A stretch of 64,000 nucleotides of DNA, taken from Mytilus edulis (taxonomy: Eukaryota). Position 1 is the first letter of the stretch; each line of letters starts with the position of its first letter. A program made the position numbers and the translations under genes. Below are positions 4,101 to 48,300 of this stretch, piece by piece. Under the pieces are notes generated by a model. That model saw only the letters and a list, made by a program, of their open reading frames with translations. It had not been told where the DNA came from and did not search any database. Location: assembly GCF_963676685.1 (NCBI RefSeq), contig NC_092351.1, positions 31,620,001 through 31,684,000 of the forward strand. Direction: 5' to 3'.

Positions 4101-6581
4101 CACTTGCATATTTTTACACTATTAATATTATCCACTTGCGGCGGGGGTATCATCAGTGAGCAGTAGCTCGCAGTTTCACTTGTTTTATTTTATTTCCGTT
4201 TTTCTAGATGCAATTGCAGGAATTGTGTTGGCATTGGTAATAATTATTATAATTATTACTGTTGGTGTAATTAGATATAGATGGAAATTGAAAAAAGGTG
4301 AGTACTTAAAAACAATTGACAAAGTTGTTCAAATGAGAATGTCAAAGTTTCAACGAAAAGAGTCTTATTGTTTTGCTCGGCTTATGCGAGTATGCGATAT
4401 TTGATGTTTCACAAGAAGCAATATTTGTAACAAAAAACTTTAATGGAACCGACATAACATTAAACGCTTATGTAATTGAATAGATTCGAATGGAAGAAAG
4501 GAAGGAGAAGATTAAACAATACTCATGTATTAAAAAAACAAGAAGAATTGAGATGGCTTAATTGTCATCGAATATTAATTATATTATATAATAAACGCTT
4601 TGATATGCACAAGCAAAACAGGAATCAAGACACAAAACAAAACAGGAATCAAGACACAAAACAAAACAAAAGAAATAAAAGATACAGTTAGGCGTCCAAG
4701 AACAGACCAGAACGAAACAGATTGCCGTATCAATATCGAATGGCAAGCCTCTGCACTTGTCCCGTTTCTAGGGAAAAAAAATTCGTATGTAGAAATTTTA
4801 ACCCTTTGAAAGATTATAAATACACGAGCATGTACAAAACAAATGGATGCAAGAAGTTCATTAATGCAACTTTCAGGGCTCTCAGATGATCAAAAGTTGA
4901 AGTGTTTTTCTTTTCTTTTCTTCTAGCTCAGCGTAGACATGCTGTACAGGCAGAAGCTGGACAATATGGCTCTTACGACAATATGATTTGCAACTATAGT
5001 CCTCACCGAGAGAGAGGAAAACAATGTACTTATGAGAAACTTGATGAACGAAATAATCACCGTGACTCAGAAGGTGAAGAAGATGATGAAACAAAAGCAT
5101 TAATTCCACCATGTGGGCGCTTTCCGTTCAGACGAAAACGGACGAGACTTTTTACATATCCTTTCAGTGAATTAAAAGCTGATGATTCAGAATCGAATGA
5201 AAATATATGTGATATTGAACAAGACTCAAGTTTAAGTCTTTCAAAGCGGTATTCGTATCCTGATGTGAGTTTTACCAAAGTATCAATACAAAACAATATT
5301 CTAGATTCTGGTATAACAGATTTTACATCACGACAAGAACCACACAAGATTCTTCTGTCTTTCAATGTTCCAGATAAAAATAGAGTGATAGAAAAAGTGC
5401 AAACATGGGATTGTAAATATAATTGGTCAGATAAGAGCAATCACAGGCGTACTATTTCAGCATACAACTTTCTAGCAACACATGCAAGTGGTCAAGAGAG
5501 TGCTCTCAGGAAAGTTCGGGGATGGGAAAACAAAGGTAGTAATGTTATAATGTATACAGTAGCTTTATGTTTTGAGTCAACATTGATGAAATAAGACATT
5601 CGACATAATTTTAAATTTAATGGGACCACATAAAGGCAACAGTAGTATAACCGCTGTTCTAAAGTCATAAATCGATTCAGAGAAAAATAATTCCGTGTTA
5701 CAAACTAAAACCGAGGGAAACACATAAACTTTAACAGGAAAACAACAAAACATGAGAAAAACTGAAGTGCAACAAAAACAAAAACGACAATGCAACATAC
5801 AAAAAAAATAAAACAATACGATAACAACTGCCGTTTTCCTGACTTAGTACCGGACATTTAAAGAAAACATGAGGTGTTGATAAGCTGCATGCATTCACGC
5901 GAATTACGTACAGAAGACAAAATTGGCGTTATAATTTAAATGATAGGACCCCTGTTTTTACGATCGTATTCTTAGATAAAATTTAATCAACATCTAAATG
6001 TTACTGACCAAAGTCATCCGTGATGAAAGTAACACGCATTTATTTTAACTGATTTACATGTTAGGTACATGCTTGTCAAGTGTAAATAACCATGAAATAG
6101 AACAAAATCCTCCTAATAACTCTGAAATAGATAGAATAAATAATATTAAAATATCAACAGGAATAATGATAGAGATTGGTTAAATTTTAAGAACATGTTT
6201 CTCTTTTAAAACACAAAAACGTAGTTTGATCCTCTGCAAAATCATAACACTTGTGTTTACGCCAAAAAAAACTTTTATTTTACAGAAGAGCTGTCACCAA
6301 CGTTTATGAGTAAAGTAGCAAGATACCTTGGACCACGATACAAATTCCGTAGTTTGTCAAGGGAATTAGGATTGTCTGACACTGATCTTATGAATATTCA
6401 ACAGAACTGCAAGGATGATGTTGTAGAGCAAGGATACCAAGTTTTACTGAAATTAAAACAAAAAGAACTGATACAGACAGAAACTGACGTTATCAATAAA
6501 ATTCAGGATTTAGGTCTTAATGAAATAGTTGCCAAAATTAATAATCATGCAAACATTACGGTTAAAAGACTGTGTGCTTAG
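1180..6581 (+). CDS. TNF receptor superfamily member with death domain (death receptor; EDAR/p75NTR-like architecture), 5' exon(s) unresolved
   Basis: Phase-consistent GT-AG exons: 1180-1367 (TNFR Cys-rich: CIPCRPCKPGYYSDVHAYKCKLCTNCTELNKSQRMYCTSKEDTVCG), 1750-1784, 2186-2227 (stalk), 4208-4297 (TM: AIAGIVLALVIIIIIITVGVIRYRWK), 4927-5535 (long cytoplasmic region), 6286-6581 (death domain: MSKVARYLGPRYKFRSLSRELGLSDTDLMNIQQNCKDDVVEQGYQVLLKLK, TAG). A possible signal-peptide exon starts at 635 (ITLCMILPECLAQ) but has no clear donor. Confidence 0.8.
3045..4184 (+). mobile_element. Helentron/DINE-1-like non-autonomous element (HINE) with internal ~168-bp tandem repeats
   Basis: T-rich start, subterminal inverted repeat (tatactcc...ggggtata), GTCC/GTCA microsatellite at ~3095-3125, six ~168-bp units, 3' hairpin gtgagcagtagctcgc, ending cttgtt. 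Confidence 0.8.
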
Positions 6582-8117
6582 TTATTGAGCAAATCAATAT
6601 TTTATAATATTTGTTTACAAATCGTCTTTATTTTTGTTGAAGTTTTTGTTCATGTATATGTTTTTGTTGTTTTTGTCGTTTCTTTGTTTTTTTTATGTAA
6701 AAATCAAAGATGATTTTTTGAATAGATAGTTGCTCAAATTATATACCTTTTTATTATAATTGAAATTTACTTAATCGGATCATTTCCAAGAATTGGTTCA
6801 CAAATGTTTGGAATTCTTTGTAAAAAAAGTATTCAAAAAGTTTGGTTAATATTTCTCAGCTTTCTCTTGAATCATTTGTAATGTTGATGTACATGTTTTT
6901 AAGGTTTTATGGGCATTTCTTGTTTCACTCTCATTAAGTTCATATTAAAAGAAGTTTTTGAACAATGTGTTTTTCATATTCTCTAATGAATAATCAACAA
7001 ATGTCATATGAATGAACATGATATTAATGGGATTGACATGTGATCCATGGTAACCGCATAACCTATTGAAATAATTTATGAAGATGTATTTTGCTGTCAA
7101 CGATAGGAAGGCAGACAACTATATAGCTAGACCGAAATCTTAAAAGTTTACACTATTCATTAATTAATTTTAGTCTTATCTTCGGGTCTGTACTTGCACA
7201 GTACTACTAAAAAAGAAAAAAATCAACAGACAAACAATAGCACACCAAACACAACATAGAAACTAAAGATTGAACAACACCAGCCCTACCATAAACTAGG
7301 CTGATCTCGGACGCCTCGGAAGGCAATCATTTAGCCCTTCAAATCACTTTTGTTTTTTTGTAGATATGGTGGGCACCTTTCTTTTGACCAAATACCGCTC
7401 AAGTCCTTATTATTCTAATATGCCTATGGAATATTAAACTTAAAGTTAATTTACCGTTGTTCTTTATACACTTTTCTTACTGAGTCTAGATTTACATTAC
7501 GGCAGAGGTAAGAAAAGCAAAATAACCTTGTCTTGTTGAGGCATCCGACCTCACTCTATGTCAAATGCACGCAATTCTGGCATCAGCTTGTTGTGGGAGA
7601 AGGTGTTAATAAGGGAAACACAAGGAGTACTACGAGGGTCAATATCTGAACAGTCATTTTGTCTCTAGTAGTAAGTTGTCTTATTGGCAATCATACAAGG
7701 TGTCTTTATTTTATTTTTAGATTGTTCAGTATGATTCATAAAATTTCGTCTTATTGACTTATCATCATATAAAAGTACAGCGACCAATAATAACGATTAC
7801 CAAATCGATTTTTCTTGCGGTACTAATTATTCTATACGTGAAAAACAAAGAGTAACTATGCTCGTTTATAATCGTAGAGACAAAAGATACCAAATGGATA
7901 TTCGAATTTATAAGCAGAACTTATATATAATTAATTCGCACATACCAGCACATTTGTTGATCTCACATCGAACATGAACATACAACAGGACGGTGATACT
8001 CCCATGCATATAAAGGAAGAAAAATACACATGTAAATTTTTTTGTTTTGTAAGTATCATAATATATAAAAGGGGGGGAACCAAACTTCAAAAAGGAGGAT
8101 ATCCATCAAACTGACAA

Positions 8118-8494
8118 AGGAGTAGGTTCAATTTTAGACGGTTTTCGTGTAAAACGAAAGTGGCCGCATTCGTGTTCATCCTTAATATTGAAATGTAAGT
8201 TGTATTTTATGATAATATATAACATATATAAAGGTTGAGGATGAACACGGATGCGGCCACTTTCATTTTTACCAAAAACCATCTGAAAAGTGACATTTTT
8301 CGTCATATTAGGTAGATTTTTCATATTTGAGCTTAAATCGGATCGTTTTTAATGACTAAAGCTGTTAAAATCTTTCACATAAACTAATTAATTCAAATAA
8401 AATAGACACTTAAGTGTTTAAAAAGTGGTCAAAATCTTTTGTCAGATGAACCTGAAATTTGAGGCCAAAATCGGTCCTTACCGGACCTACTCCA
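8118..8494. mobile_element. Non-autonomous DNA transposon (Kolobok-like MITE) upstream of FREP1
   Basis: Terminal inverted repeats (TIRs) AGGAGTAGGT / ACCTACTCCA. TTAA follows the right end; the left flank is degenerate. Confidence 0.5.
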
Positions 8495-8682
8495 TTAAAC
8501 ATATTAATCAGCAGAAACAGTGAAAACGACTGATCAGTTATTTATGACTTGTTCTGGCGTATATCAAAGAAAAACAAGAAATATCAAGATTCTTGGAAAT
8601 TGTTTCGTGTTAAAACTATCTGGTAACCATCTGTTGCCTTCTTGTATAACACTAGCATATCTGTTTACATGCATCCTGAAAG

Positions 8683-8689
8683 TATAAAA
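8683..8689 (+). promoter_or_regulatory. Putative TATA box of FREP1
   Basis: TATAAAA 37 nt upstream of the ATG at 8726. The paralog has AATAAAA at a similar offset (~25495). Confidence 0.45.
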
Positions 8690-8725
8690 TGGTATCGCAT
8701 GTATAGTTCTCCATTTGGGGCTAAA

Positions 8726-11700
8726 ATGGCTTCCTGTCTATCTATTTTTGTTGTTCTAACCACCCTGAATGTGTTGGTTGCATCGGATACTAAGTTAAAC
8801 AGAAAAAGAGTTGTATCTACATCAGATTCTGGTAAGCATTAAATTCTTGATAGGATGATAATCTAAGATAACACTTCGTTTTAAAAAAAAAACATTCTCA
8901 CCTACTGAGAGAAGAGAAAGTACAGGGAAACTCTAGTGACAAAATTGTCTTAATTTTAACAAAATTTTAGAAATGAACAAAACGATAGTATGAGGTCAAA
9001 ACTATTTGTGAATAGTGGGTCAATATAATAATAAAAGCTATGTTCAAATTACATTTCTCGATTGTTGAAAGTTGTATATAAAGAAATAAGGTTTTGCAAA
9101 ACTAATATAATATCAAATATCAATATACTGTTTAGAAAGTATTAATGATTTAGTTGATACAACTTTGTATTTATGTATTTTCATAAAATGTTCCAAATTT
9201 AGTCCTGAACGTTTGTTATATTCCAGAACAACATGTTTTCCATTCATTCCGTTGGTCGATTTAGTCGGGCGTTTTGTTATATCAGGTTTAAGAGGTTTTT
9301 TCCGACTTTTCAAAATGACCTTTCAGATCGTTCTTTGTTGTTGTTGATACTGTTTGATTATTTAGTCAATGCTTTTGTACACATTTATCATATCAGTTAT
9401 ATGTTAAGATATATGATTTAATCATTGTTTTCTTTATATATTATAGGTGTTTGTTTCTATGGAGCTACCGCAGAACGAGTTCTTAATATCTTGGCATATA
9501 GAGATGAACATTTATTTTTGCGTCCAGGTTTGACCACAATGATTTTTATAAAACTTACATTTTGACAAAACATGAAGATATTAAACTTAATGAACCAGTT
9601 TAAAGGCTACGCCGTGATCCCTTGGAGTATTGATACTACACAGGTCACTAGCACATTGTGATAAGAATTTGTTACCAATGGAATTCATACTAGTGAACTA
9701 CTAAAGTGATTGGGCCATCAAAATAATCAAGTTACTTTCATTGATCTATACAGACACAAAAGTACTGACAGTAACAATTTGTAGACCTTTCCTGCATTTA
9801 TTTTCGATCGTTAGAATAAATTTCCTCATCTGTTGTTTAAGTGATAGTATCGTTTCGATTTTTTTATGCCCCACCTACGATAGTAGAGGGGCATTATGTT
9901 TTCTGGTCTGTGCGTCCGTTCGTTCGTTTGTTCGTCCGTCCGTTCGTTCGTTCGTCCGTCTGTCCCGCTTCAGGTTAAAGTTTTTGGTCGAGGTAGTTTT
10001 TGATGAAGTTGAAGTCCAATCGACTTCAAACTTGGTACACATGTTCCCTATGATATGATCTTTCTAATTTTAATGCCAAATTAGAGATTTTACCCCAATT
10101 TCACGGTCCACTGAACATAGAAAATGATAGTGCGAGTGGGGCATTCGTGTACTGAGGACACATTCTTGTTAGTAATCTTTAAGGGACTTTACTCTTTTCT
10201 AACTTAAACTCAATGTTCAGCGTTATTGTTCGGGTCACATCTACTTTTCGCTACAAAAAAGAGAAGCGCAGCTTTATATCACAACTTTTTAGGAGCTTGC
10301 TACTATAAACTGTGTGTTAAACTAATAACCCAATGTCAAATCTTAGCGTCTCCACATCTTCGCTTTCAACCATTTATAATCCTATAATTGTGTAGGATGG
10401 AAGATACCGTCTGTTTTCACATTGTGTTGTCTTTGTAATTTAAAGGATCATGATAAAAGAATTAATTTGTGTAAATAGCTCGGACTGTAATAAGTATATC
10501 AGGGCGATTATATTCCTTAAAAACTTTTTGTTGACGGTAAATCTTAGTTAGTCTTTGAAATATTGGACATTTTATGTAGAGAAATATATGTGGTAGACGT
10601 TCCCTTCTCTTCATGATGTTTGGTTGATGTTATCCTCATATCTTTTTTCTGAAAGTATAAGTGTATTTGCCTTGTGAGAAGGCCGCAGGTTGGCATATAT
10701 ATACTTTATTTGCCTTTACTTGCTTTAGACGTCAAACACCAACCATTCATGTTTCATTATGCATAAAAATTATTACTTATTTTTATAAACAGTACGTAAG
10801 CCGAAAGACTGCTCAGATTTGGACCCTAAACATGACTCTAGTGGAGTGTATAGAATCTATCCCTATGCCGGAAGGGGATTCAAAGTTTATTGTGATATGA
10901 AGACCGACGGTGGGCGATGGACAGTAAGTTATATAAATATTGCTTAAATCTCTACTCAATTTACAAAAATCAATTTTATACGGGTAAAATTATGAACTGT
11001 TAGGTGCTGGGTTTTTTTTTTTTGTGTTTCGATTAGATTAGAGAAAGAAACGCCAAAATACACTATGGAGGAATGCGCCCATCTCTAGGATTAAAAACAA
11101 AAATTCAAGTTCAGAGATTCAAATAGTAAATATTTATGTCACCACCACAGCTCAGCTTAAGGTCTTCTCTTAACATTCAAATGTTCCAAAATCGTATTGG
11201 TTACCTTAAGTAAACCACTGAAAAAACACATAAAATGTCGCTTCATTTCGGCTTTTAGTAAGCTTGAGTGTTCTACAACTATATCTTTCAGTGTTTTAAC
11301 TAGTTCCTAATAATTTCTATCAAGGAAATTAGCATTAACTTTTTTTACTTTTTAACTTTTCTCATCACTTGGCGTCTGGCGTCCGTCATCTTTACAAAAT
11401 TCTTCTCCACTTTATCCACTTGATCAGAAAGATTTAAACTAAGCTACAAATTTAAATAGGGTATCTTGATTGAAAAATGGTGTATAACTTCTTAAGTGTC
11501 GATGTGGCATGCAGTATGTTGGCGAGATAGAACAACAGTTCAACAAACGCAAGAATGGTAATCGAAGTGACTACACCTGTAAGCCCGAAATCCCGTAAGT
11601 TGTCATTTGATATCACCTGGGCACGCTCAATCTGATCTAAAAAAAAATCTTACAATCACAATCATAGACAATAACGAGGGTTGGTCAAGGGAAAGGTTTT

Positions 11701-42347: not shown

Positions 42348-45300
42348 ATGTTGGTGGCGTTGTGTCTTGCCTCTTTTATTATTGGTGTTGTGGTTACTAT
42401 TCTAATCCAGACATTTGTCATCAGAAGACGACTTCTTGCCATTCCTGTAGAACCAATTTCCCACAAACCACAGTTCTGTCAATATAAATTGCCAAAGGTG
42501 AGAAAAAGGAGATAGAAAACAAAAAAGTCTATAGGTTGTTTGAGACCTAAAATTTTTACAACATCTGTCATCATGGTCAACGTCTTTTCTGTTTAATATT
42601 TCACAAAACTATTGTTCAAAGAAAATTTACATTCAAACATGTTCATTACTTAGTTTTACATTACAGTATATTTCAGAGCTCCAGATAAGCTGCGTATTTG
42701 CGTGATCACGCAATACAAATAATAAAAAACCCAATGCAATTGCCCATTGCAGGGTTCAATAACCCAATTAATTCAAAGGAAAACCCAATTATAATCCAAA
42801 ACCATAAGTTCTCAACCCTTTTATTGGCCACCATTTGCGTTATTTACCCTTATCTGTTTACAGTCGACGCGTAAACTATTTTTATAATATTTATAATTGG
42901 AAATTTCCTTTCGTTCTAAAAATAGATCCCTGCATCAAGTAGCTGAAATGGGTCCCTGTTAGAGTTTTCCGTTGCTCAATAGCTACACGTGTTTTTGAAA
43001 ACATTTCGATCTTCTCGGCGTTTATCCAATTAGCGTGTGTCATGAAGTCATATTTTTTTTCGCATTGCTCGGGATTTATCATAACATACATTGAATTAAA
43101 ACAAAAGTGAATGTCCGGTAAAAATATTGAATAGAAGCATGTTTTCTGCTTCTTTTGAAAAGCTTAGGGAAAGTTATGATGATAACAAGACTCAGCCAGT
43201 GTTTTTAGGAAGCGTCCATCGAACACACGGGCGTGTGTGCGTACCTTAACGAGAACATTGCTAATAAAAGCAGGGTTTCCTCAAAAACGAAATCAGTTGG
43301 AAAGATGAAAGGCCAAATCAATTATGACATGATAAAGCATCAGAAACCAAAAGTTCTAATAAAAGACAAATAAACCCAGATTTATGAAAATTGGAATAAA
43401 ACAAAAACATTCAAGTATAATTAGAGTTTATATACTATTTTTTTTTTCTTCATTTTACGGTTAATTAATGAATACACACACAGGCACTGATCTCAGAATT
43501 TATTATATAAAGGTATAGGACGAGTGCCTGTGAATACACAATATCCGGTTTTTTTACAGTTTATATGAGAAAATACAAAACTAGCAGAAGGTTTGAAACG
43601 GAACACAAATCAAACCTACAATTGCTCGTCAATAAACCAAATAAAACAGCTAGCAAATAACCCTAACCCGAACCCTAAACCAAATAAAACAGCTAAACAA
43701 AGAAAGAAACATATTTAAGATGGAAAAAAATCTGGGGTTGATATTGCCTAAATATTCAATATTGTGTTGATGAAAAAACCCAATACATTAAGGAGCTTGG
43801 TGGTGAAAAACCCAATTTGATATTAACATGAGGGGTGACTTGGAATTGATAATGCAATCAAAAAACTTTATCACCCAATTATATAAGAAAATGGTGGGTA
43901 AAAAACCCAATTTGTGAATTCTTATCTGGAGCTCTGATATTTATGAAAGTACTTATTTCAAGTCAAACTAAATATAGTTTGGAAATTTTCTTCATCCTTA
44001 TGCTTCATCTTTAAGCTTTAGTATTTTTAGTCTTTAGAAGTGTCAACTTGCAATTGACACTATAATCTCTCTGTATTTTCGATCACTGTGGTAATTTTAT
44101 GTCGCTATTGTATAAAACTCATTAGTACACTTGCTACCTCAATAAAATGCATGTAGCAAAGCAGGTATAGACCAAGTTTTGGTCTTCATGTTCATGTTCC
44201 AGGTAAACACACTATGTACATTTTGTAGTATGTATACTGTATACAAGAAAACATTCTTTAGGACTCAAAGAGTTGAACATTCATTAAATAAAAAAATAAA
44301 GAGTTGATTCTTTAATAAATAAGAAATACCATTGTAACTGGAGAGCACAAATTTCATTACAAAATTGCTTGTCTCCACTGGGACTCGAACCCGGGACCTC
44401 TGTGTTACAAGGCAGCGCGCTAACCGACTGAGCTAAAGAAGTACTTCCTTAGCTCAACCGCTTACGGCTGACTAAGTATCTACTAAGTTTTTCTAAGGGA
44501 AGCAATCCCGTCACACCGCCCCCACCTCAAGAGTCATTATACTCTATAATGATGATATTTTCATCTTTTTTATATTTATATTTTAACCTGGCTAGGTAAT
44601 TCTTCTAACAGTGGGTTATTATTGTTGGGCGCCAATGTAACCGTAGAGCACGAATTTCATTACAAAATTGCTTGTCTCCACCGGGACTCGAACTCGAGAC
44701 CTCTGTGTTACAAGGCAGCGCACTAACCGACTGAGCTAAAGAAGTACTTCCTTAGCTCAACTGCTTACGGCTGACTAAGTATCTACTAAGTTTTTCTAAG
44801 GGAAGCAATCCTGTCACACCATGCATAAACATTACATGTAAAAGGTTTGTAACATGATGCATGTTCTGATAATGTTTTACAGGAATTGCTAGCAGTAATA
44901 CATGATCAGGATCAGAAAGGACGCAAAGAATCATGTATAGCATTAAATTTGGTCATTCAGTTTTTATTCAAAGAGCTACGAGATACAAATCGTGTTCGAA
45001 GGTATGGTTTCACACATTCATGATTGAAGCTAGTTTTAATAGCCACACAGTTCACATGCTTTTAAAAGTCAACTTTTATAAAGGAGACGTACATATTAGG
45101 CTAATTTTAACCTGTTAACATGGTTAATGATTTGAAAATAAAAAAAAATATAAATACTGTTACAAATCACATTTTTTTAAGATTAGAAGAAAATAGATAC
45201 ATGTACATGTACATTTATGAGAAGACGTGGTATGAGTGCCAGTCACAATTTGTTAAAAAAAATGTCTAAGAATGGTTGTCAACATGGAGCCTTGAGTCAC

Positions 45301-48300
45301 ACTAAACAGCAAGTTATAAAGGGCCCCCAAAATGACTAGGAATGTAAAAGCATTCAAACAGGAAAACAGAGTCTAATCTATATAAAAAAAACTTGAAATA
45401 CTTACATTGTATGTACCATGATGTACCACATCAACAAAGGGCAACCCTTGAACAACAGGTTCCTTAGCCTTGATGACACATGATTTGACAGTGACTTTAT
45501 TCAATATATATGTTTTGATAGATATACTTGTATGCCAGATATGTATATTCATAGCCTGTATTTCTGTTTCAATTTTCAGATGGGTAACAAAGAAAATGAA
45601 CATAGAATTCAACGATATGCTTCAGAGTACAACAGGAAAATTAATAGAAAAGATAACAGTAAGTCTGAAAATAGTGCACTGGTTTTTATACGCTCGTCAA
45701 AATTTTGACGGGACGTATTATGGTATACAAATGTCCGGTATCCATCCGTCCGTCTGTCTGTCTGTCCATCTGTCTGTCCAGCATAAACATGTCGCACCGT
45801 AACTTGAGAACAACTTATCCAAATTTCATGAAACTTAATATAGTTGTTTCTTATAATGGTCAAATGATCTGTATTCTTTTTGAGTTACGGCACTTTGTAA
45901 CTAAAACAGGGGTATGTTTTTTTTCACATGTCGCACAGTATCTCAAAAACCATTCTTGATTATTGCTTAAAACTTTACACACTTCTTAGTTATATTAATC
46001 TTAATATCTGTATACTTTTTGGTGATGATTCAAAATTTCATTTTTGAGTTATTGAGTATTTCGTAGAAAAGGGGGAGGGGTTTTTTTTCATGTCGCGCTG
46101 TATCTCAAAAACGATTTATGATTATTGCTTTAAAAAACTTTACACACTTCTTTGTTATATTAATCTTAAGATCTGTATACTTTTTGGTGATGATTCAAAA
46201 TTTCATTTTTGAGTTATTTAGTATTTTGTAAAAAAGGGGGAGGTTTTTTTTTACATTTCGGGCCGTATCTCAAAAACGATTTATGATTATTGCTTAAAAT
46301 TTTACACACTTTTTTGTTATATTAATCTTAAGATCTGTATACTTTTTGGTGATGACTCAAAATTTTATTTTTGAGTTAATGAGTATTTTGTAAAAAAGGG
46401 GATGTTTTTTTTTACATGTCACGCAGTATCTCAAAAACAATTTATGATTATTACTTGAAACTTTACACACTTCTTTGTTATATTAATCTAAAGATCTAGA
46501 TACTTTTTGGTTTGATTCAAAATTTTATTTTAGTGATATTTATTTTTTTGTAAAAAAAAAAAAACAGGGTGTCTCAAAAACAATAAATTGTTATTGCTTA
46601 AAATTTTCTCAGGAACTATTTATGATTATTGCATAAAACTTCCACATAAGACGTCGGGCATATCATGCGCTCATGGCGCAGCTGTTTATTGTCTTGCCTG
46701 AGATGAAAGTAAGGGAAAGGAACACATATGAATTGCTTCTCCTGTGACGACAACAACATCTACAATTGTTAAGTTTTCTGCTACAGTTAGATTGATATGA
46801 TCTACTTACAAAAAACAATGATATTTTCTATCAAGTAATTATCTATTCATCTCAGTATGTAAACCATTTTCATGCCCTTCCCACTAGTTCATGGTCAAGC
46901 GACATTGAATTATAAAATATCATCTAAATTCATTGCAAAAAATGACTTGCCTTCTATTTAGTTTAGAAAGATAACAGACAATTGAAGAATATATATTAGA
47001 AATGGTTCATTTACTACAATGATAAAATTTACTAATATTACTTCTGCAAAGCCAAATAAAAGTGTATATGTAAATACTATTACTGGGATTCACTGTTCTC
47101 CTAAATCGTAAATTGTGATATTGCATGTTTTGGATCATTGAACCAAATTCATATAATTTATTTACACAGTTTTTAGGACAAATCACACCTATGTTTTGTA
47201 TTATGAATTTTATGTTTTTGTATTTTAGTTAAGAGATTTCAATTTAGGACCAACATTTCCAGTTATAAATTGTGTAGCTGTAGACACAGTAAAACTGTCA
47301 GAGGATGAATCGCTAGAGGTATGGTACTCAATTATTAAAATACAATATTTATAGATTATTTATAGAATATCTCAACAAGATAGATTTTCTCACTTGAGCC
47401 AGTAGTTGTGAAAGTGAGAAAAGCAATCAAGTTGAGATGGCCAATGATAATCTGTTTATTGCTATTTAACCTATGACAAAGTTATTAATTTCATATTCAT
47501 CTTTTATTATACATGTACCATACTGGGTCTGATTCAGAACATCATGAACATCTCACATGATCAAAGTTTTCAAAAAGATCATTCATCATACATGTGCAAG
47601 TTATTTTTATCACAACCTTCCAGCAATTGATTTGACTTTTGGCTAAGTAATACCTGCCTAATTTTGATCTATGGTAAAATTGCACAGAAATGTTATAAAG
47701 CAGCGATGGGACTATCCACTAAATAGCTATCTCTGGTACATGTAAATGAGAAAGCAAAATAAAAATACAATAAAGCCAAAACCACATTTAGAGGTACTTT
47801 AGTTGATGTTTTTGCAATTTTGGATTTTTCCCCCTCTAACGTTTAAAATATCTGTAAATGCAGAAAATGGTTGCTTTAGTCATAGTTTAATTGAACATTA
47901 GAAAATGATCAGTAAACGACCTAATTTCACCCTACAATTCCTAGTAAACATAACTATTTTATTTTATCTGTTTTCAGATATACAGTTGAATCCTTTAGAA
48001 ACAACTATTTGACTATATTGTTGTACAAATGTAAATATTAGTAAATTCATCATATTTTTAAATGAAATAAAAAACAATGCCCTGTCAATTATATTTATTT
48101 TCTCTTGATTTTTAATTATAATTATATATATTTATTCATTGCAGGAATTGGACATTATGGCAGATCTTGACTATACTGGGGGATTTCAGCTTGCCATAGA
48201 AATAGATTTAGTTTTCAAAAAGTGGGCATATTTATCTGTGACTGTTACAAAATTGAAGGGCATTGGAAGGTTACAGTTTACACGTAATCCTTATACACAC

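What the first reader, a model, noticed from the sequence alone, without database searches (positions are those of the whole stretch)
44333..44818. Complete 486-bp LTR mini-retrotransposon whose LTRs carry a tRNA-derived Pol III promoter
Seen: what looks like two tandem tRNA-Thr pseudogenes is one element: TSD CCAT, 183-bp LTR (TG..CA), 120-bp core, 183-bp LTR, TSD CCAT. On the minus strand the core starts with PBS TGGCGCCCAAC and ends with PPT GAGGTGGGGGCGG, and each LTR holds box A and box B on that same strand. Known: TGGCGCCCAAC is complementary to the 3' end of tRNA-Lys(CTT), 4-bp TSDs are typical of many Gypsy-group integrases, and plant Cassandra TRIMs carry 5S RNA in their LTRs. From memory, a tRNA-containing TRIM group called Helenus has been described with 4-bp TSDs in animals, so the class is probably not new, though this family may be. 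Inference: this is a SINE/LTR hybrid, transcribed by Pol III and mobilised in trans by a Gypsy-type partner, and tRNA scanners would miscall it as tRNA-Thr genes.
Basis: partly seen in the sequence, partly recalled or inferred. Interest (0 to 1): 0.85.

Follow-up and report, generated by a model that had tools for sequence, protein, structure and literature searches.

The report
Known Helenus tRNA-carrying mini retrotransposon

Summary
Window 44333-44818 is LTR (183 bp), core (120 bp), LTR (183 bp), with TG..CA ends and CCAT on both sides. The sense strand is minus. It carries a tRNA-Lys PBS, a PPT, and a tRNA-Thr-like unit with box A and box B in each LTR.

It is a real mobile family. The window's genome holds at least 42 near-full-length copies. 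Of 29 loci examined, 19 have perfect 4-bp target-site duplications with differing sequences. Solo LTRs with their own duplications and an LTR-core-LTR-core-LTR array also occur.

The family is already published as Helenus-1_MyGa / Helenus-1B_MyGa of Mytilus galloprovincialis (Kojima 2024, PMC10886601). By eye, the LTRs are 96-98% identical to the consensus and the core about 97%. The same scan noted another such element elsewhere in this genome (s1-834646).

Pol III transcription and Gypsy mobilisation remain inferences. RNA reads were strand-biased but uninformative. Two Gypsy families in this genome share the PBS, TG..TTACA ends and 4-bp duplications, but little else.

The 2024 paper does not mention a covarying, spacer-less palindrome centred on tRNA-like position +1, or a hairpin just before the PPT. 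Interest is low.

The parts
44329..44332 (.). Target-site duplication CCAT (left on + strand)
   Evidence: The same 4 bp recur at 44819-44822. 19 of 29 family loci have perfect 4-bp flanks with differing sequences.
44333..44515 (-). 3' LTR (sense orientation), 183 bp, TG..CA
   Evidence: By eye it differs at 4 of 183 positions from the published Helenus-1_MyGa-LTR.
44370..44442 (-). tRNA-Thr(TGT)-like unit of the 3' LTR. Box A is at 44435-44424 and box B at 44391-44381.
   Evidence: Rfam tRNA 20.6 bits, below the gathering score of 29, with acceptor and anticodon stems mispaired. ARAGORN calls nothing. Motif positions.
44361..44364 (-). T4 run (ATTTTGTA) about 10 nt after the tRNA-like unit of the 3' LTR. 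It is a candidate Pol III terminator and the predicted 3' end of the genomic RNA.
   Evidence: T4 runs occur only at this LTR position on the sense strand, in all 29 copies examined (present in 55 of their 59 LTRs). Their absence elsewhere is not significant by shuffling.
44429..44456 (-). Spacer-less 28-nt palindrome (3' LTR copy) centred on tRNA-like position +1
   Evidence: (I2).
44516..44635 (-). Internal region (120 bp, non-coding)
   Evidence: By eye it differs at 4 of 120 positions from Helenus-1B_MyGa-I, with no indels.
44516..44528 (-). Polypurine tract GAGGTGGGGGCGG. The family form ends GAAG, so this copy is mutated at the LTR junction.
   Evidence: read laying shows 44517 C>T and 44518 G>T in essentially all other copies.
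44534..44552 (-). Hairpin just upstream of the PPT (8-bp stem, GAG loop)
   Evidence: Sequence. Analogous hairpins occur in other Helenus families and in the Gypsy candidates. The sub-threshold Rfam hit SBWMV2_UPD-PKl at 44530-44555 (+) lies on this hairpin and is spurious.
44624..44634 (-). [quoted passage not shown]
   Evidence: Kojima 2024 Fig. S2C lists Helenus-1_MyGa under tRNA-Lys-CTT.
44636..44818 (-). 5' LTR (sense orientation), 183 bp, TG..CA
   Evidence: By eye it differs at 7 of 183 positions from the published Helenus-1_MyGa-LTR.
44673..44745 (-). tRNA-Thr-like unit of the 5' LTR. Box A is at 44738-44727 and box B at 44694-44684, with G52>A. This is the presumed Pol III promoter.
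   Evidence: Rfam tRNA 19.3 bits. Motifs.
44664..44667 (-). T4 run of the 5' LTR. Pol III would have to read through it to make full-length RNA.
44732..44759 (-). Spacer-less palindrome (5' LTR copy) centred on tRNA-like position +1
   Evidence: (I3).
44819..44822 (.). Target-site duplication CCAT (right on + strand)

Best explanation
Window 44333-44818 (sense strand minus) is one full-length but decayed insertion of the published non-autonomous LTR retrotransposon family Helenus-1/1B_MyGa, a tRNA-bearing TRIM ('TRIMp3') of Mytilus mussels.

Shown here:
- The LTR-PBS-core-PPT-LTR anatomy.
- The 4-bp target-site duplication.
- Membership of a dispersed family with on the order of 100 or more copies, including solo LTRs and tandem arrays.

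Inferred, as in the 2024 paper and by analogy with Cassandra:
- RNA polymerase III starts near tRNA-like position +1 in the 5' LTR, using the internal box A and box B.
- It reads through the weak T4 run of that LTR and ends at the T4 run of the 3' LTR. The tRNA-like unit would then be the R region.
- tRNA-Lys primes minus-strand synthesis at the 11-nt PBS, and the PPT primes the plus strand.
- Reverse transcriptase and integrase come in trans from a Ty3/Gypsy element that makes 4-bp duplications.

This particular copy is probably immobile. It has 4.9% LTR-LTR divergence, mostly CpG decay, and a mutated PPT end.
For: Anatomy.

Family size: at least 42 near-full-length matches at 89-97% identity, from 532 first-look candidates in the 1.37-Gb genome. 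There are 45 exact LTR-end + PBS junctions.

Transposition: 19 of 29 distinct loci have perfect 4-bp flanks with differing sequences, and several more differ by one base. Six solo LTRs have their own perfect 4-bp TSDs. A 788-bp LTR-I-LTR-I-LTR array is flanked by ATAT.

Identity with the published family: Table S1 lists Helenus-1_MyGa (LTR 183, internal 125) and Helenus-1B_MyGa (LTR 182, internal 120), both with 4-bp TSDs. Compared by eye with the consensus sequences in DataS1, the LTRs differ at 4 and 7 of 183 positions and the core at 4 of 120. The other published M. galloprovincialis families, Helenus-2 and Helenus-3, are also present in this genome.

tRNA-like unit: it has box A and box B but mispaired acceptor and anticodon stems.

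Candidate partners: Ty3/Gypsy elements with TGGCGCCCAAC PBSs, TG..TTACA ends and 4-bp TSDs (TTTG, TATA) exist in the genome. Their domain order is RT, RNase H, integrase.
Against: Nothing argues against the identity.

The mechanism is less secure:
- No transcription start was seen. The RNA reads over the element are few, come from many copies, and show no pile-up at the predicted start.
- Their 5:1 strand bias would mean antisense RNA if the library is of the usual dUTP type.
- The T4 run about 80 nt downstream of the predicted start, inside the 5' LTR, should stop much of the Pol III transcription.
- The absence of further T4 runs is not significant; 37-73% of shuffles also lack them.
- The Gypsy candidates share only generic features with Helenus-1: the PBS, a TG start, the TTACA LTR end and the TSD length.
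Confidence: 0.95

Rival explanations
1. It is the same Helenus element, but its replicative RNA is made by RNA polymerase II, either from a U3 promoter or by read-through from host genes. The tRNA-like unit would then be a passenger or structural module, not the working promoter.
For: No Pol III start was seen. A T4 terminator lies about 80 nt downstream of the predicted start, inside the 5' LTR. The conserved palindrome needs RNA that begins upstream of position +1 if it is to fold in the 5' LTR. Kojima 2024 also states that Pol III use is unproven.
Against: Box A and box B are conserved across very divergent Helenus families while the rest of the LTR is not (sequences). Element lengths stay within the Pol III range. 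The closest analogue, Cassandra, is transcribed from its 5S promoter (paper text).
Confidence: 0.2
2. It is a local tandem duplication of a genuine tRNA-Thr gene (a 303-bp unit repeated 1.6 times), not a transposon.
For: Any LTR-core-LTR looks formally like a 1.6-unit tandem repeat. The repeat match extends 3-4 bases beyond the LTR on the left (ccat/ccaa) and 2 bases on the right (cc/cc).
Against: Dozens of copies on all large contigs have the same ends and different 4-bp TSDs, and there are solo LTRs with TSDs. A PBS and a PPT sit exactly at the LTR borders. The tRNA-like unit fails both scanners.
Confidence: 0.01
3. It is a pair of independent tRNA-derived SINE insertions, or a functional tRNA-Thr gene family being amplified.
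For: It has tRNA-like box A and box B. Kojima notes that tRNAscan-SE predicts a tRNA-Thr for seven bivalve Helenus families.
Against: There is no A-rich or LINE-derived tail. The whole 486-bp unit, not each half, is flanked by the TSD. The acceptor stem pairs at only 4 of 7 positions and the anticodon stem is broken. Instead, the acceptor 5' strand covaries with an upstream arm.
Confidence: 0.02

Closest known systems
Helenus-1_MyGa / Helenus-1B_MyGa (Mytilus galloprovincialis; Kojima 2024, Biology 13:119, PMC10886601; Repbase)
   Same: The LTR is 183 bp against 183/182 bp. The core is 120 bp against 125/120 bp. It has the same TGTGAC..GGTTACA ends, the same T + TGGCGCCCAAC PBS, the same PPT family form, and a 4-bp TSD. 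By eye the LTRs are 96-98% identical to the Helenus-1 LTR and the core about 97% identical to the Helenus-1B core.
   Different: Only copy-level decay: 9 LTR-LTR differences and a PPT end of GCGG instead of GAAG. The copy combines a Helenus-1-type LTR with a Helenus-1B-type core.
Other bivalve Helenus families (for example Helenus-1_MyCo, Helenus-3_MyGa, Helenus-2_MyGa, Helenus-1_MoPh)
   Same: The architecture, the tRNA-Thr-like unit, 4-bp TSDs, and in many families the tRNA-Lys PBS. They also share the palindrome at position +1 and the pre-PPT hairpin.
   Different: The internal regions and the U3 sequence differ. Helenus-2 uses a different PBS. LTR identity to the window copy is 68-92%.
Cassandra (plant TRIM with 5S rRNA in its LTRs)
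   Same: It is a TRIM whose LTRs carry a Pol III gene-internal promoter plus terminator, and it also forms tandem arrays.
   Different: It carries 5S rather than tRNA (a type 1, not type 2, promoter). It is found in plants and makes 5-bp TSDs. Transcription has been shown experimentally for Cassandra only (paper text).
tRNA-derived SINEs (SINE2)
   Same: A tRNA-like head with box A and box B, non-autonomous, short.
   Different: SINEs have no LTRs, PBS or PPT. They are mobilised by LINEs through target-primed reverse transcription, and they have tails and variable TSDs.
biv-TRIM (Satovic et al. 2019, PMC6934838)
   Same: A TRIM reported in bivalves including M. galloprovincialis, with solo repeats and tandem forms.
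   Different: biv-TRIM has no recognisable canonical PBS, and that paper's text describes no tRNA-like unit or Pol III promoter in the terminal repeats. It is a different family.

Membership tests
Helenus (tRNA-bearing TRIM, TRIMp3) | Short non-coding element with two LTRs (TRIM size; published range 311-1263 bp) | tested here: met
   486 bp, made of two 183-bp LTRs and a 120-bp core.
Helenus (tRNA-bearing TRIM, TRIMp3) | tRNA-derived sequence with conserved box A (TRGCY..YGG) and box B (GGTTC) inside each LTR | tested here: met
   Rfam tRNA alignments of 20.6 and 19.3 bits cover the whole model. TAGCTCAGTCGG and GTTCGAGTCC are present in both LTRs.
Helenus (tRNA-bearing TRIM, TRIMp3) | PBS next to the 5' LTR and PPT next to the 3' LTR | tested here: met
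   T + TGGCGCCCAAC after the 5' LTR and GAGGTGGGGGCGG before the 3' LTR. The PBS matches tRNA-Lys-CTT as listed in Kojima Fig. S2C.
Helenus (tRNA-bearing TRIM, TRIMp3) | 4-bp target-site duplications in animals | tested here: met
   CCAT at this copy. 19 of 29 loci and 6 solo LTRs have perfect 4-bp TSDs.
Helenus (tRNA-bearing TRIM, TRIMp3) | Transcription from the tRNA-derived Pol III promoter | tested here: inconclusive
   One random-primed RNA run shows low, strand-biased coverage with no start at the predicted site, and the reads come from many copies. This is unproven in the literature too.
Helenus-1/1B_MyGa (specific family) | Sequence identity to the published consensus over LTR and internal region | tested here: met
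   Compared by eye only.
Cassandra | 5S rRNA-derived sequence in the LTR | tested here: not met
   The only non-spurious RNA-family match in the region is tRNA. There is no 5S hit.
tRNA-derived SINE (SINE2) | Single tRNA-like head plus body plus A-rich or LINE-like tail, with no LTRs, PBS or PPT | tested here: not met
   An LTR-PBS-PPT-LTR structure with the TSD around the whole unit.
Functional tRNA-Thr gene | Cloverleaf that passes tRNA scanners | tested here: not met
   ARAGORN finds 0 genes in the window. Rfam scores fall below the gathering score, and the acceptor and anticodon stems are mispaired.

The most novel reading that the evidence does not exclude
The element itself is known. However, many Helenus LTRs, from bivalves and by eye also from coelacanth, carry a 26-32-nt palindrome with a spacer of 0-1 nt. 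It is centred exactly on tRNA-like position +1, and the 2024 paper does not mention it.

Its upstream arm covaries with the acceptor 5' strand and the start of box A. Mismatches are almost all G.U on the sense strand. By eye, families that lack the palindrome keep an intact acceptor stem instead.

The most novel reading is that this is a functional sense-RNA structure at the U3/R border. It could replace the acceptor stem so that the genomic RNA escapes RNase P/Z. It could act as a dimerisation or strand-transfer signal. Or it could mark the Pol III start site. A second conserved hairpin just upstream of the PPT may be the cis-signal shared with the Gypsy helper.
Probability: 0.3. Interest if true: 0.4.

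Novelty: already known. Interest (0 to 1): 0.15.

Why it matters
For this window it matters mainly for annotation. The two 'tRNA-Thr-like' units are halves of one Helenus TRIM and should be masked as a repeat, not annotated as tRNA genes or pseudogenes.

More widely, Helenus elements are the animal counterpart of Cassandra, an LTR retrotransposon that appears to have swapped its Pol II promoter for a tRNA-type Pol III promoter. That claim still lacks any experimental proof.

This mussel genome offers hundreds of copies from three families. It also holds largely intact Gypsy elements with the same primer-binding site. Two conserved RNA-structure candidates could guide such experiments.

Tried and rejected
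1. Empty-site allele. I laid Logan contigs of three DNA runs (organisms A, B, C) on window 43700-45500. The contigs are too fragmented over the repeat. In two runs a contig matches the right flank and stops exactly at 44818. An empty-site allele would do this (CCAT plus one coincidental A). No joint to the left flank was listed, so this is suggestive only.

2. Empty-site haplotig in the assembly. The left flank 44130-44332 is single-copy in the genome. The right-flank search failed with a tool error. No test was possible.

3. RNA evidence. One random-primed RNA run gave about 10x coverage from all copies together. It had a 5:1 strand bias and no start at the predicted site, and the library's strandedness is unknown. 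The result is inconclusive.

4. Selection against T4 runs as evidence for Pol III. This is not significant; 37-73% of shuffles also lack T4.

5. Counting solo LTRs from pattern counts (165 LTR ends against 45 LTR-end+PBS junctions). I rejected this as a count because Helenus-3 shares the same 16-mer LTR end. Only the six directly verified solo LTRs are claimed.

6. Autonomous partner. The three Gypsy groups that share the PBS show no extended similarity to the Helenus-1 LTR or core, so no partner can be named.

7. Tool alignment to the published consensus. The comparison was by eye.

8. biv-TRIM (Satovic 2019) was checked and is a different family.

9. A Pfam scan of the apparent exon at 44883-45002 found nothing.

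Full report
**What is there.**
- Two 183-bp direct repeats lie at 44333-44515 and 44636-44818. Both read TG..CA.
- A 120-bp core at 44516-44635 separates them.
- CCAT flanks the element at 44329-44332 and 44819-44822.
- Read on the minus strand, the order is 5' LTR, one T, the PBS TGGCGCCCAAC (44634-44624), an AT-rich core, the PPT GAGGTGGGGGCGG (44528-44516) and the 3' LTR.

Each LTR holds a tRNA-Thr(TGT)-like unit on the same strand. Rfam aligns both over the whole tRNA model, but at 20.6 and 19.3 bits, below the gathering score of 29. The acceptor and anticodon stems are mispaired. ARAGORN calls no tRNA in the whole window. So neither scanner available here miscalls it, although box A (TAGCTCAGTCGG) and the box B core (GTTCGAGTCC) are intact.

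The LTRs differ at 9 of 183 positions. Eight differences are transitions, six of them at CpG, and one is a transversion.

**Is it a transposon?** Yes. The window's genome is 1.37 Gb, and the window is C8:31620001-31684000.
- Copies: a search with the 486-bp element returned 42 near-full-length matches at 89-97% identity on all large contigs, from 532 first-look candidates. There are 45 exact LTR-end + PBS junctions.
- Duplications: in 29 distinct loci examined, 19 have perfect 4-bp flanking duplications, with 18 different sequences among them. Several more differ by one base. Chance would give about one in 256 per locus.
- Solo LTRs: among 20 isolated LTR ends fetched, six are solo LTRs with their own perfect 4-bp duplications: GTGG, CATG, AAAC, GATG, GGAC and ATAA.
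- Tandem array: one locus (L017, the same place as L027) is a 788-bp LTR-core-LTR-core-LTR array flanked by ATAT.

A local tandem duplication of a tRNA gene is excluded.

**Is it known?** Yes. Kojima (2024, Biology 13:119, PMC10886601) defined Helenus as TRIMs with a tRNA-derived sequence in the LTRs. Animal Helenus makes 4-bp duplications, bivalve families are tRNA-Thr-like, and many use a tRNA-Lys PBS.
- Table S1 lists Helenus-1_MyGa (LTR 183, internal 125) and Helenus-1B_MyGa (LTR 182, internal 120) for Mytilus galloprovincialis.
- I compared the consensus sequences in the paper's DataS1 by eye with the window's sense strand.
- The 3' LTR differs from Helenus-1_MyGa-LTR at 4 of 183 positions and the 5' LTR at 7 of 183.
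- The core differs from Helenus-1B_MyGa-I at 4 of 120 positions, with no indels.

The other two published M. galloprovincialis families are also present in this genome. The Helenus-2 motif gives 72 hits and the Helenus-3 motif 96 hits at one mismatch or fewer. Together with the genome size and the 14 large contigs, this indicates M. galloprovincialis or a very close relative. That is an inference.

The same scan has a first-stage note of another such element elsewhere in this genome (s1-834646). biv-TRIM of Satovic et al. 2019 is a different family without a canonical PBS.

**State of this copy.**
- The PPT end GCGG is private to this copy. 27 of the 28 other copies read show a PPT ending in GAAG, and 22 of them carry exactly GAGGTGGGGGAAG. 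In the read data essentially all other copies carry the family letters at 44517-44518.
- Box B position 52 of the 5' LTR is mutated.
- LTR-LTR divergence is 4.9%.

This is an old, probably immobile insertion. It lies about 64 bp upstream of what looks like an exon on the opposite strand, with an open frame and AG/GT borders at 44883-45003. Neither Pfam nor the one RNA run supports that exon.

**How it most likely works.** The shown steps are the structure, the duplications and the family behaviour. The rest is inferred, here as in the paper.
- By analogy with Cassandra, Pol III would start near tRNA-like position +1 of the 5' LTR, using box A and box B.
- The only T4 runs on the sense strand, in all 29 copies examined, sit about 10 nt after the tRNA-like unit in the LTRs.
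- The tRNA-like unit would therefore be R, the last 28 nt of the LTR would be U5, and the first 73 nt or so would be U3.
- Pol III would have to read through the first T4 and stop at the second.
- The lack of other T4 runs is not statistically significant.

RNA reads from one random-primed run cover the element at low depth. They have a 5:1 strand bias but no pile-up at the predicted start. They come from all copies, and the library's strandedness is unknown. The promoter question stays open.

**Helper element.** A pattern search for LTR end + PBS that excluded Helenus cores found three groups of long elements with TTACA + 1-3 nt + TGGCGCCCAAC.
- Two groups (represented by L056 and L058) have PR-RT-RNase H-integrase polyproteins in Ty3/Gypsy order.
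- Their LTRs are about 1.5 kb long and 97.5-98% identical.
- They have TG..TTACA ends and 4-bp duplications, TTTG and TATA.
- The third group is interrupted by a non-LTR element.

These elements fit the Gypsy-helper idea. They share no extended similarity with the Helenus-1 LTR or core, so no partner can be named. I built no consensus of them and single none out.

**Features the 2024 paper does not mention.** A search of its text for hairpin, palindrome or inverted repeat finds nothing, and it mentions terminators only for Cassandra.

(a) A palindrome at position +1.
- A 28-nt palindrome without spacer sits at 44732-44759 and 44429-44456. It is centred exactly on tRNA-like position +1.
- Its 5' arm is the end of the presumed U3. 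Its 3' arm is the acceptor 5' strand plus the start of box A.
- It is present in Helenus-1, -2 and -3 copies of this genome.
- On a 12-sequence alignment, 98.4% of cells pair. All one-sided changes are kept as G.U on the sense strand. The two central pairs show double-sided changes: GTAC, GATC and TCGA. The sample covers only three related families, so this is suggestive.
- By eye the same arrangement, with very different inner sequences and a spacer of 0-1 nt, appears in most published bivalve families and in coelacanth LTR1_LCh. Families without it (for example Helenus-4_SaGl and Helenus-2/4/5_PiIm) keep a near-intact acceptor stem.
- Its function is unknown. Candidates are a sense-RNA structure that replaces the acceptor stem, a dimerisation or strand-transfer signal, or a relic of snap-back at the RNA 5' end.

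(b) A hairpin before the PPT.
- A hairpin lies immediately upstream of the PPT, at 44534-44552 in this copy.
- It recurs with covarying stems in other Helenus families. In similar form it precedes the PPT of the Gypsy candidates.

**Verdict.** The element is a member of an already published family, so interest is low. The residual value lies in annotation, since these are not tRNA genes, and in the two candidate cis-structures.

Noticed in passing
window 44732-44759 and 44429-44456 (minus strand); L062, L065, L074, L083, L086: A spacer-less palindrome centred on tRNA-like position +1 is conserved with covariation across Helenus-1, -2 and -3. By eye it also appears in most published bivalve families and in coelacanth LTR1_LCh. 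Mismatches are almost all G.U on the sense strand. The 2024 paper does not mention it.
   Followed up: partly
window 44534-44552 (minus strand); L033:~1560-1600, L036, L056:~9170-9190, L058:~8840-8860: A stem-loop lies directly upstream of the PPT in Helenus cores, with covarying stems between families. Similar hairpins (loop ATGGAA) precede the PPT of the Gypsy candidates. It may be a shared cis-signal.
   Followed up: partly
L056 (G000:C6:57471000-57480999) and L058 (G000:C7:69109000-69118999): Two largely intact Ty3/Gypsy elements carry the same tRNA-Lys PBS as Helenus-1. They have about 1.5-kb LTRs (97.5-98% identical), TG..TTACA ends and 4-bp TSDs (TTTG, TATA). They are candidate helpers, described only.
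   Followed up: partly
L054 (G000:C3:104581000-104590999), ORF 4753-9999: A third Gypsy-like group with the same PBS has a 1749-aa open frame. It contains a second RVT_1 domain, an Exo_endo_phos_2 domain and a PHD finger. This looks like a non-LTR element nested in, or fused to, the pol region.
   Followed up: no
L017 = L027 (G000:C2:13599279-13600066): A Helenus-1 tandem form, LTR-core-LTR-core-LTR (788 bp), is flanked by a single 4-bp duplication ATAT. L010 (C9:21590778-21591549) holds a further rearranged tandem or inverted cluster.
   Followed up: partly
window 43700-43943 and 45225-45470: Both flanks of the locus carry other very high-copy repeats. Summed contig depth there is thousands-fold, as high as or higher than over Helenus. 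The left one is transcribed on both strands in the RNA run. They were not identified.
   Followed up: no
window 44883-45003 (+): An apparent exon with an open 40-codon frame and AG/GT borders lies 64 bp from the element, on the opposite strand. There is no Pfam hit and no RNA coverage in the one run examined.
   Followed up: partly
window 44818/44819 boundary: In DNA runs of two organisms, a contig matches the right flank and stops exactly at 44818. An empty-site allele would end there. No joint to the left flank was listed, so insertion polymorphism is possible but unshown.
   Followed up: partly
window 44692-44697 vs 44389-44394: The T-stem hexamer CCCGGG of the 3' LTR reads CTCGAG in the 5' LTR. 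These are two symmetric changes that keep a 6-bp palindrome.
   Followed up: no
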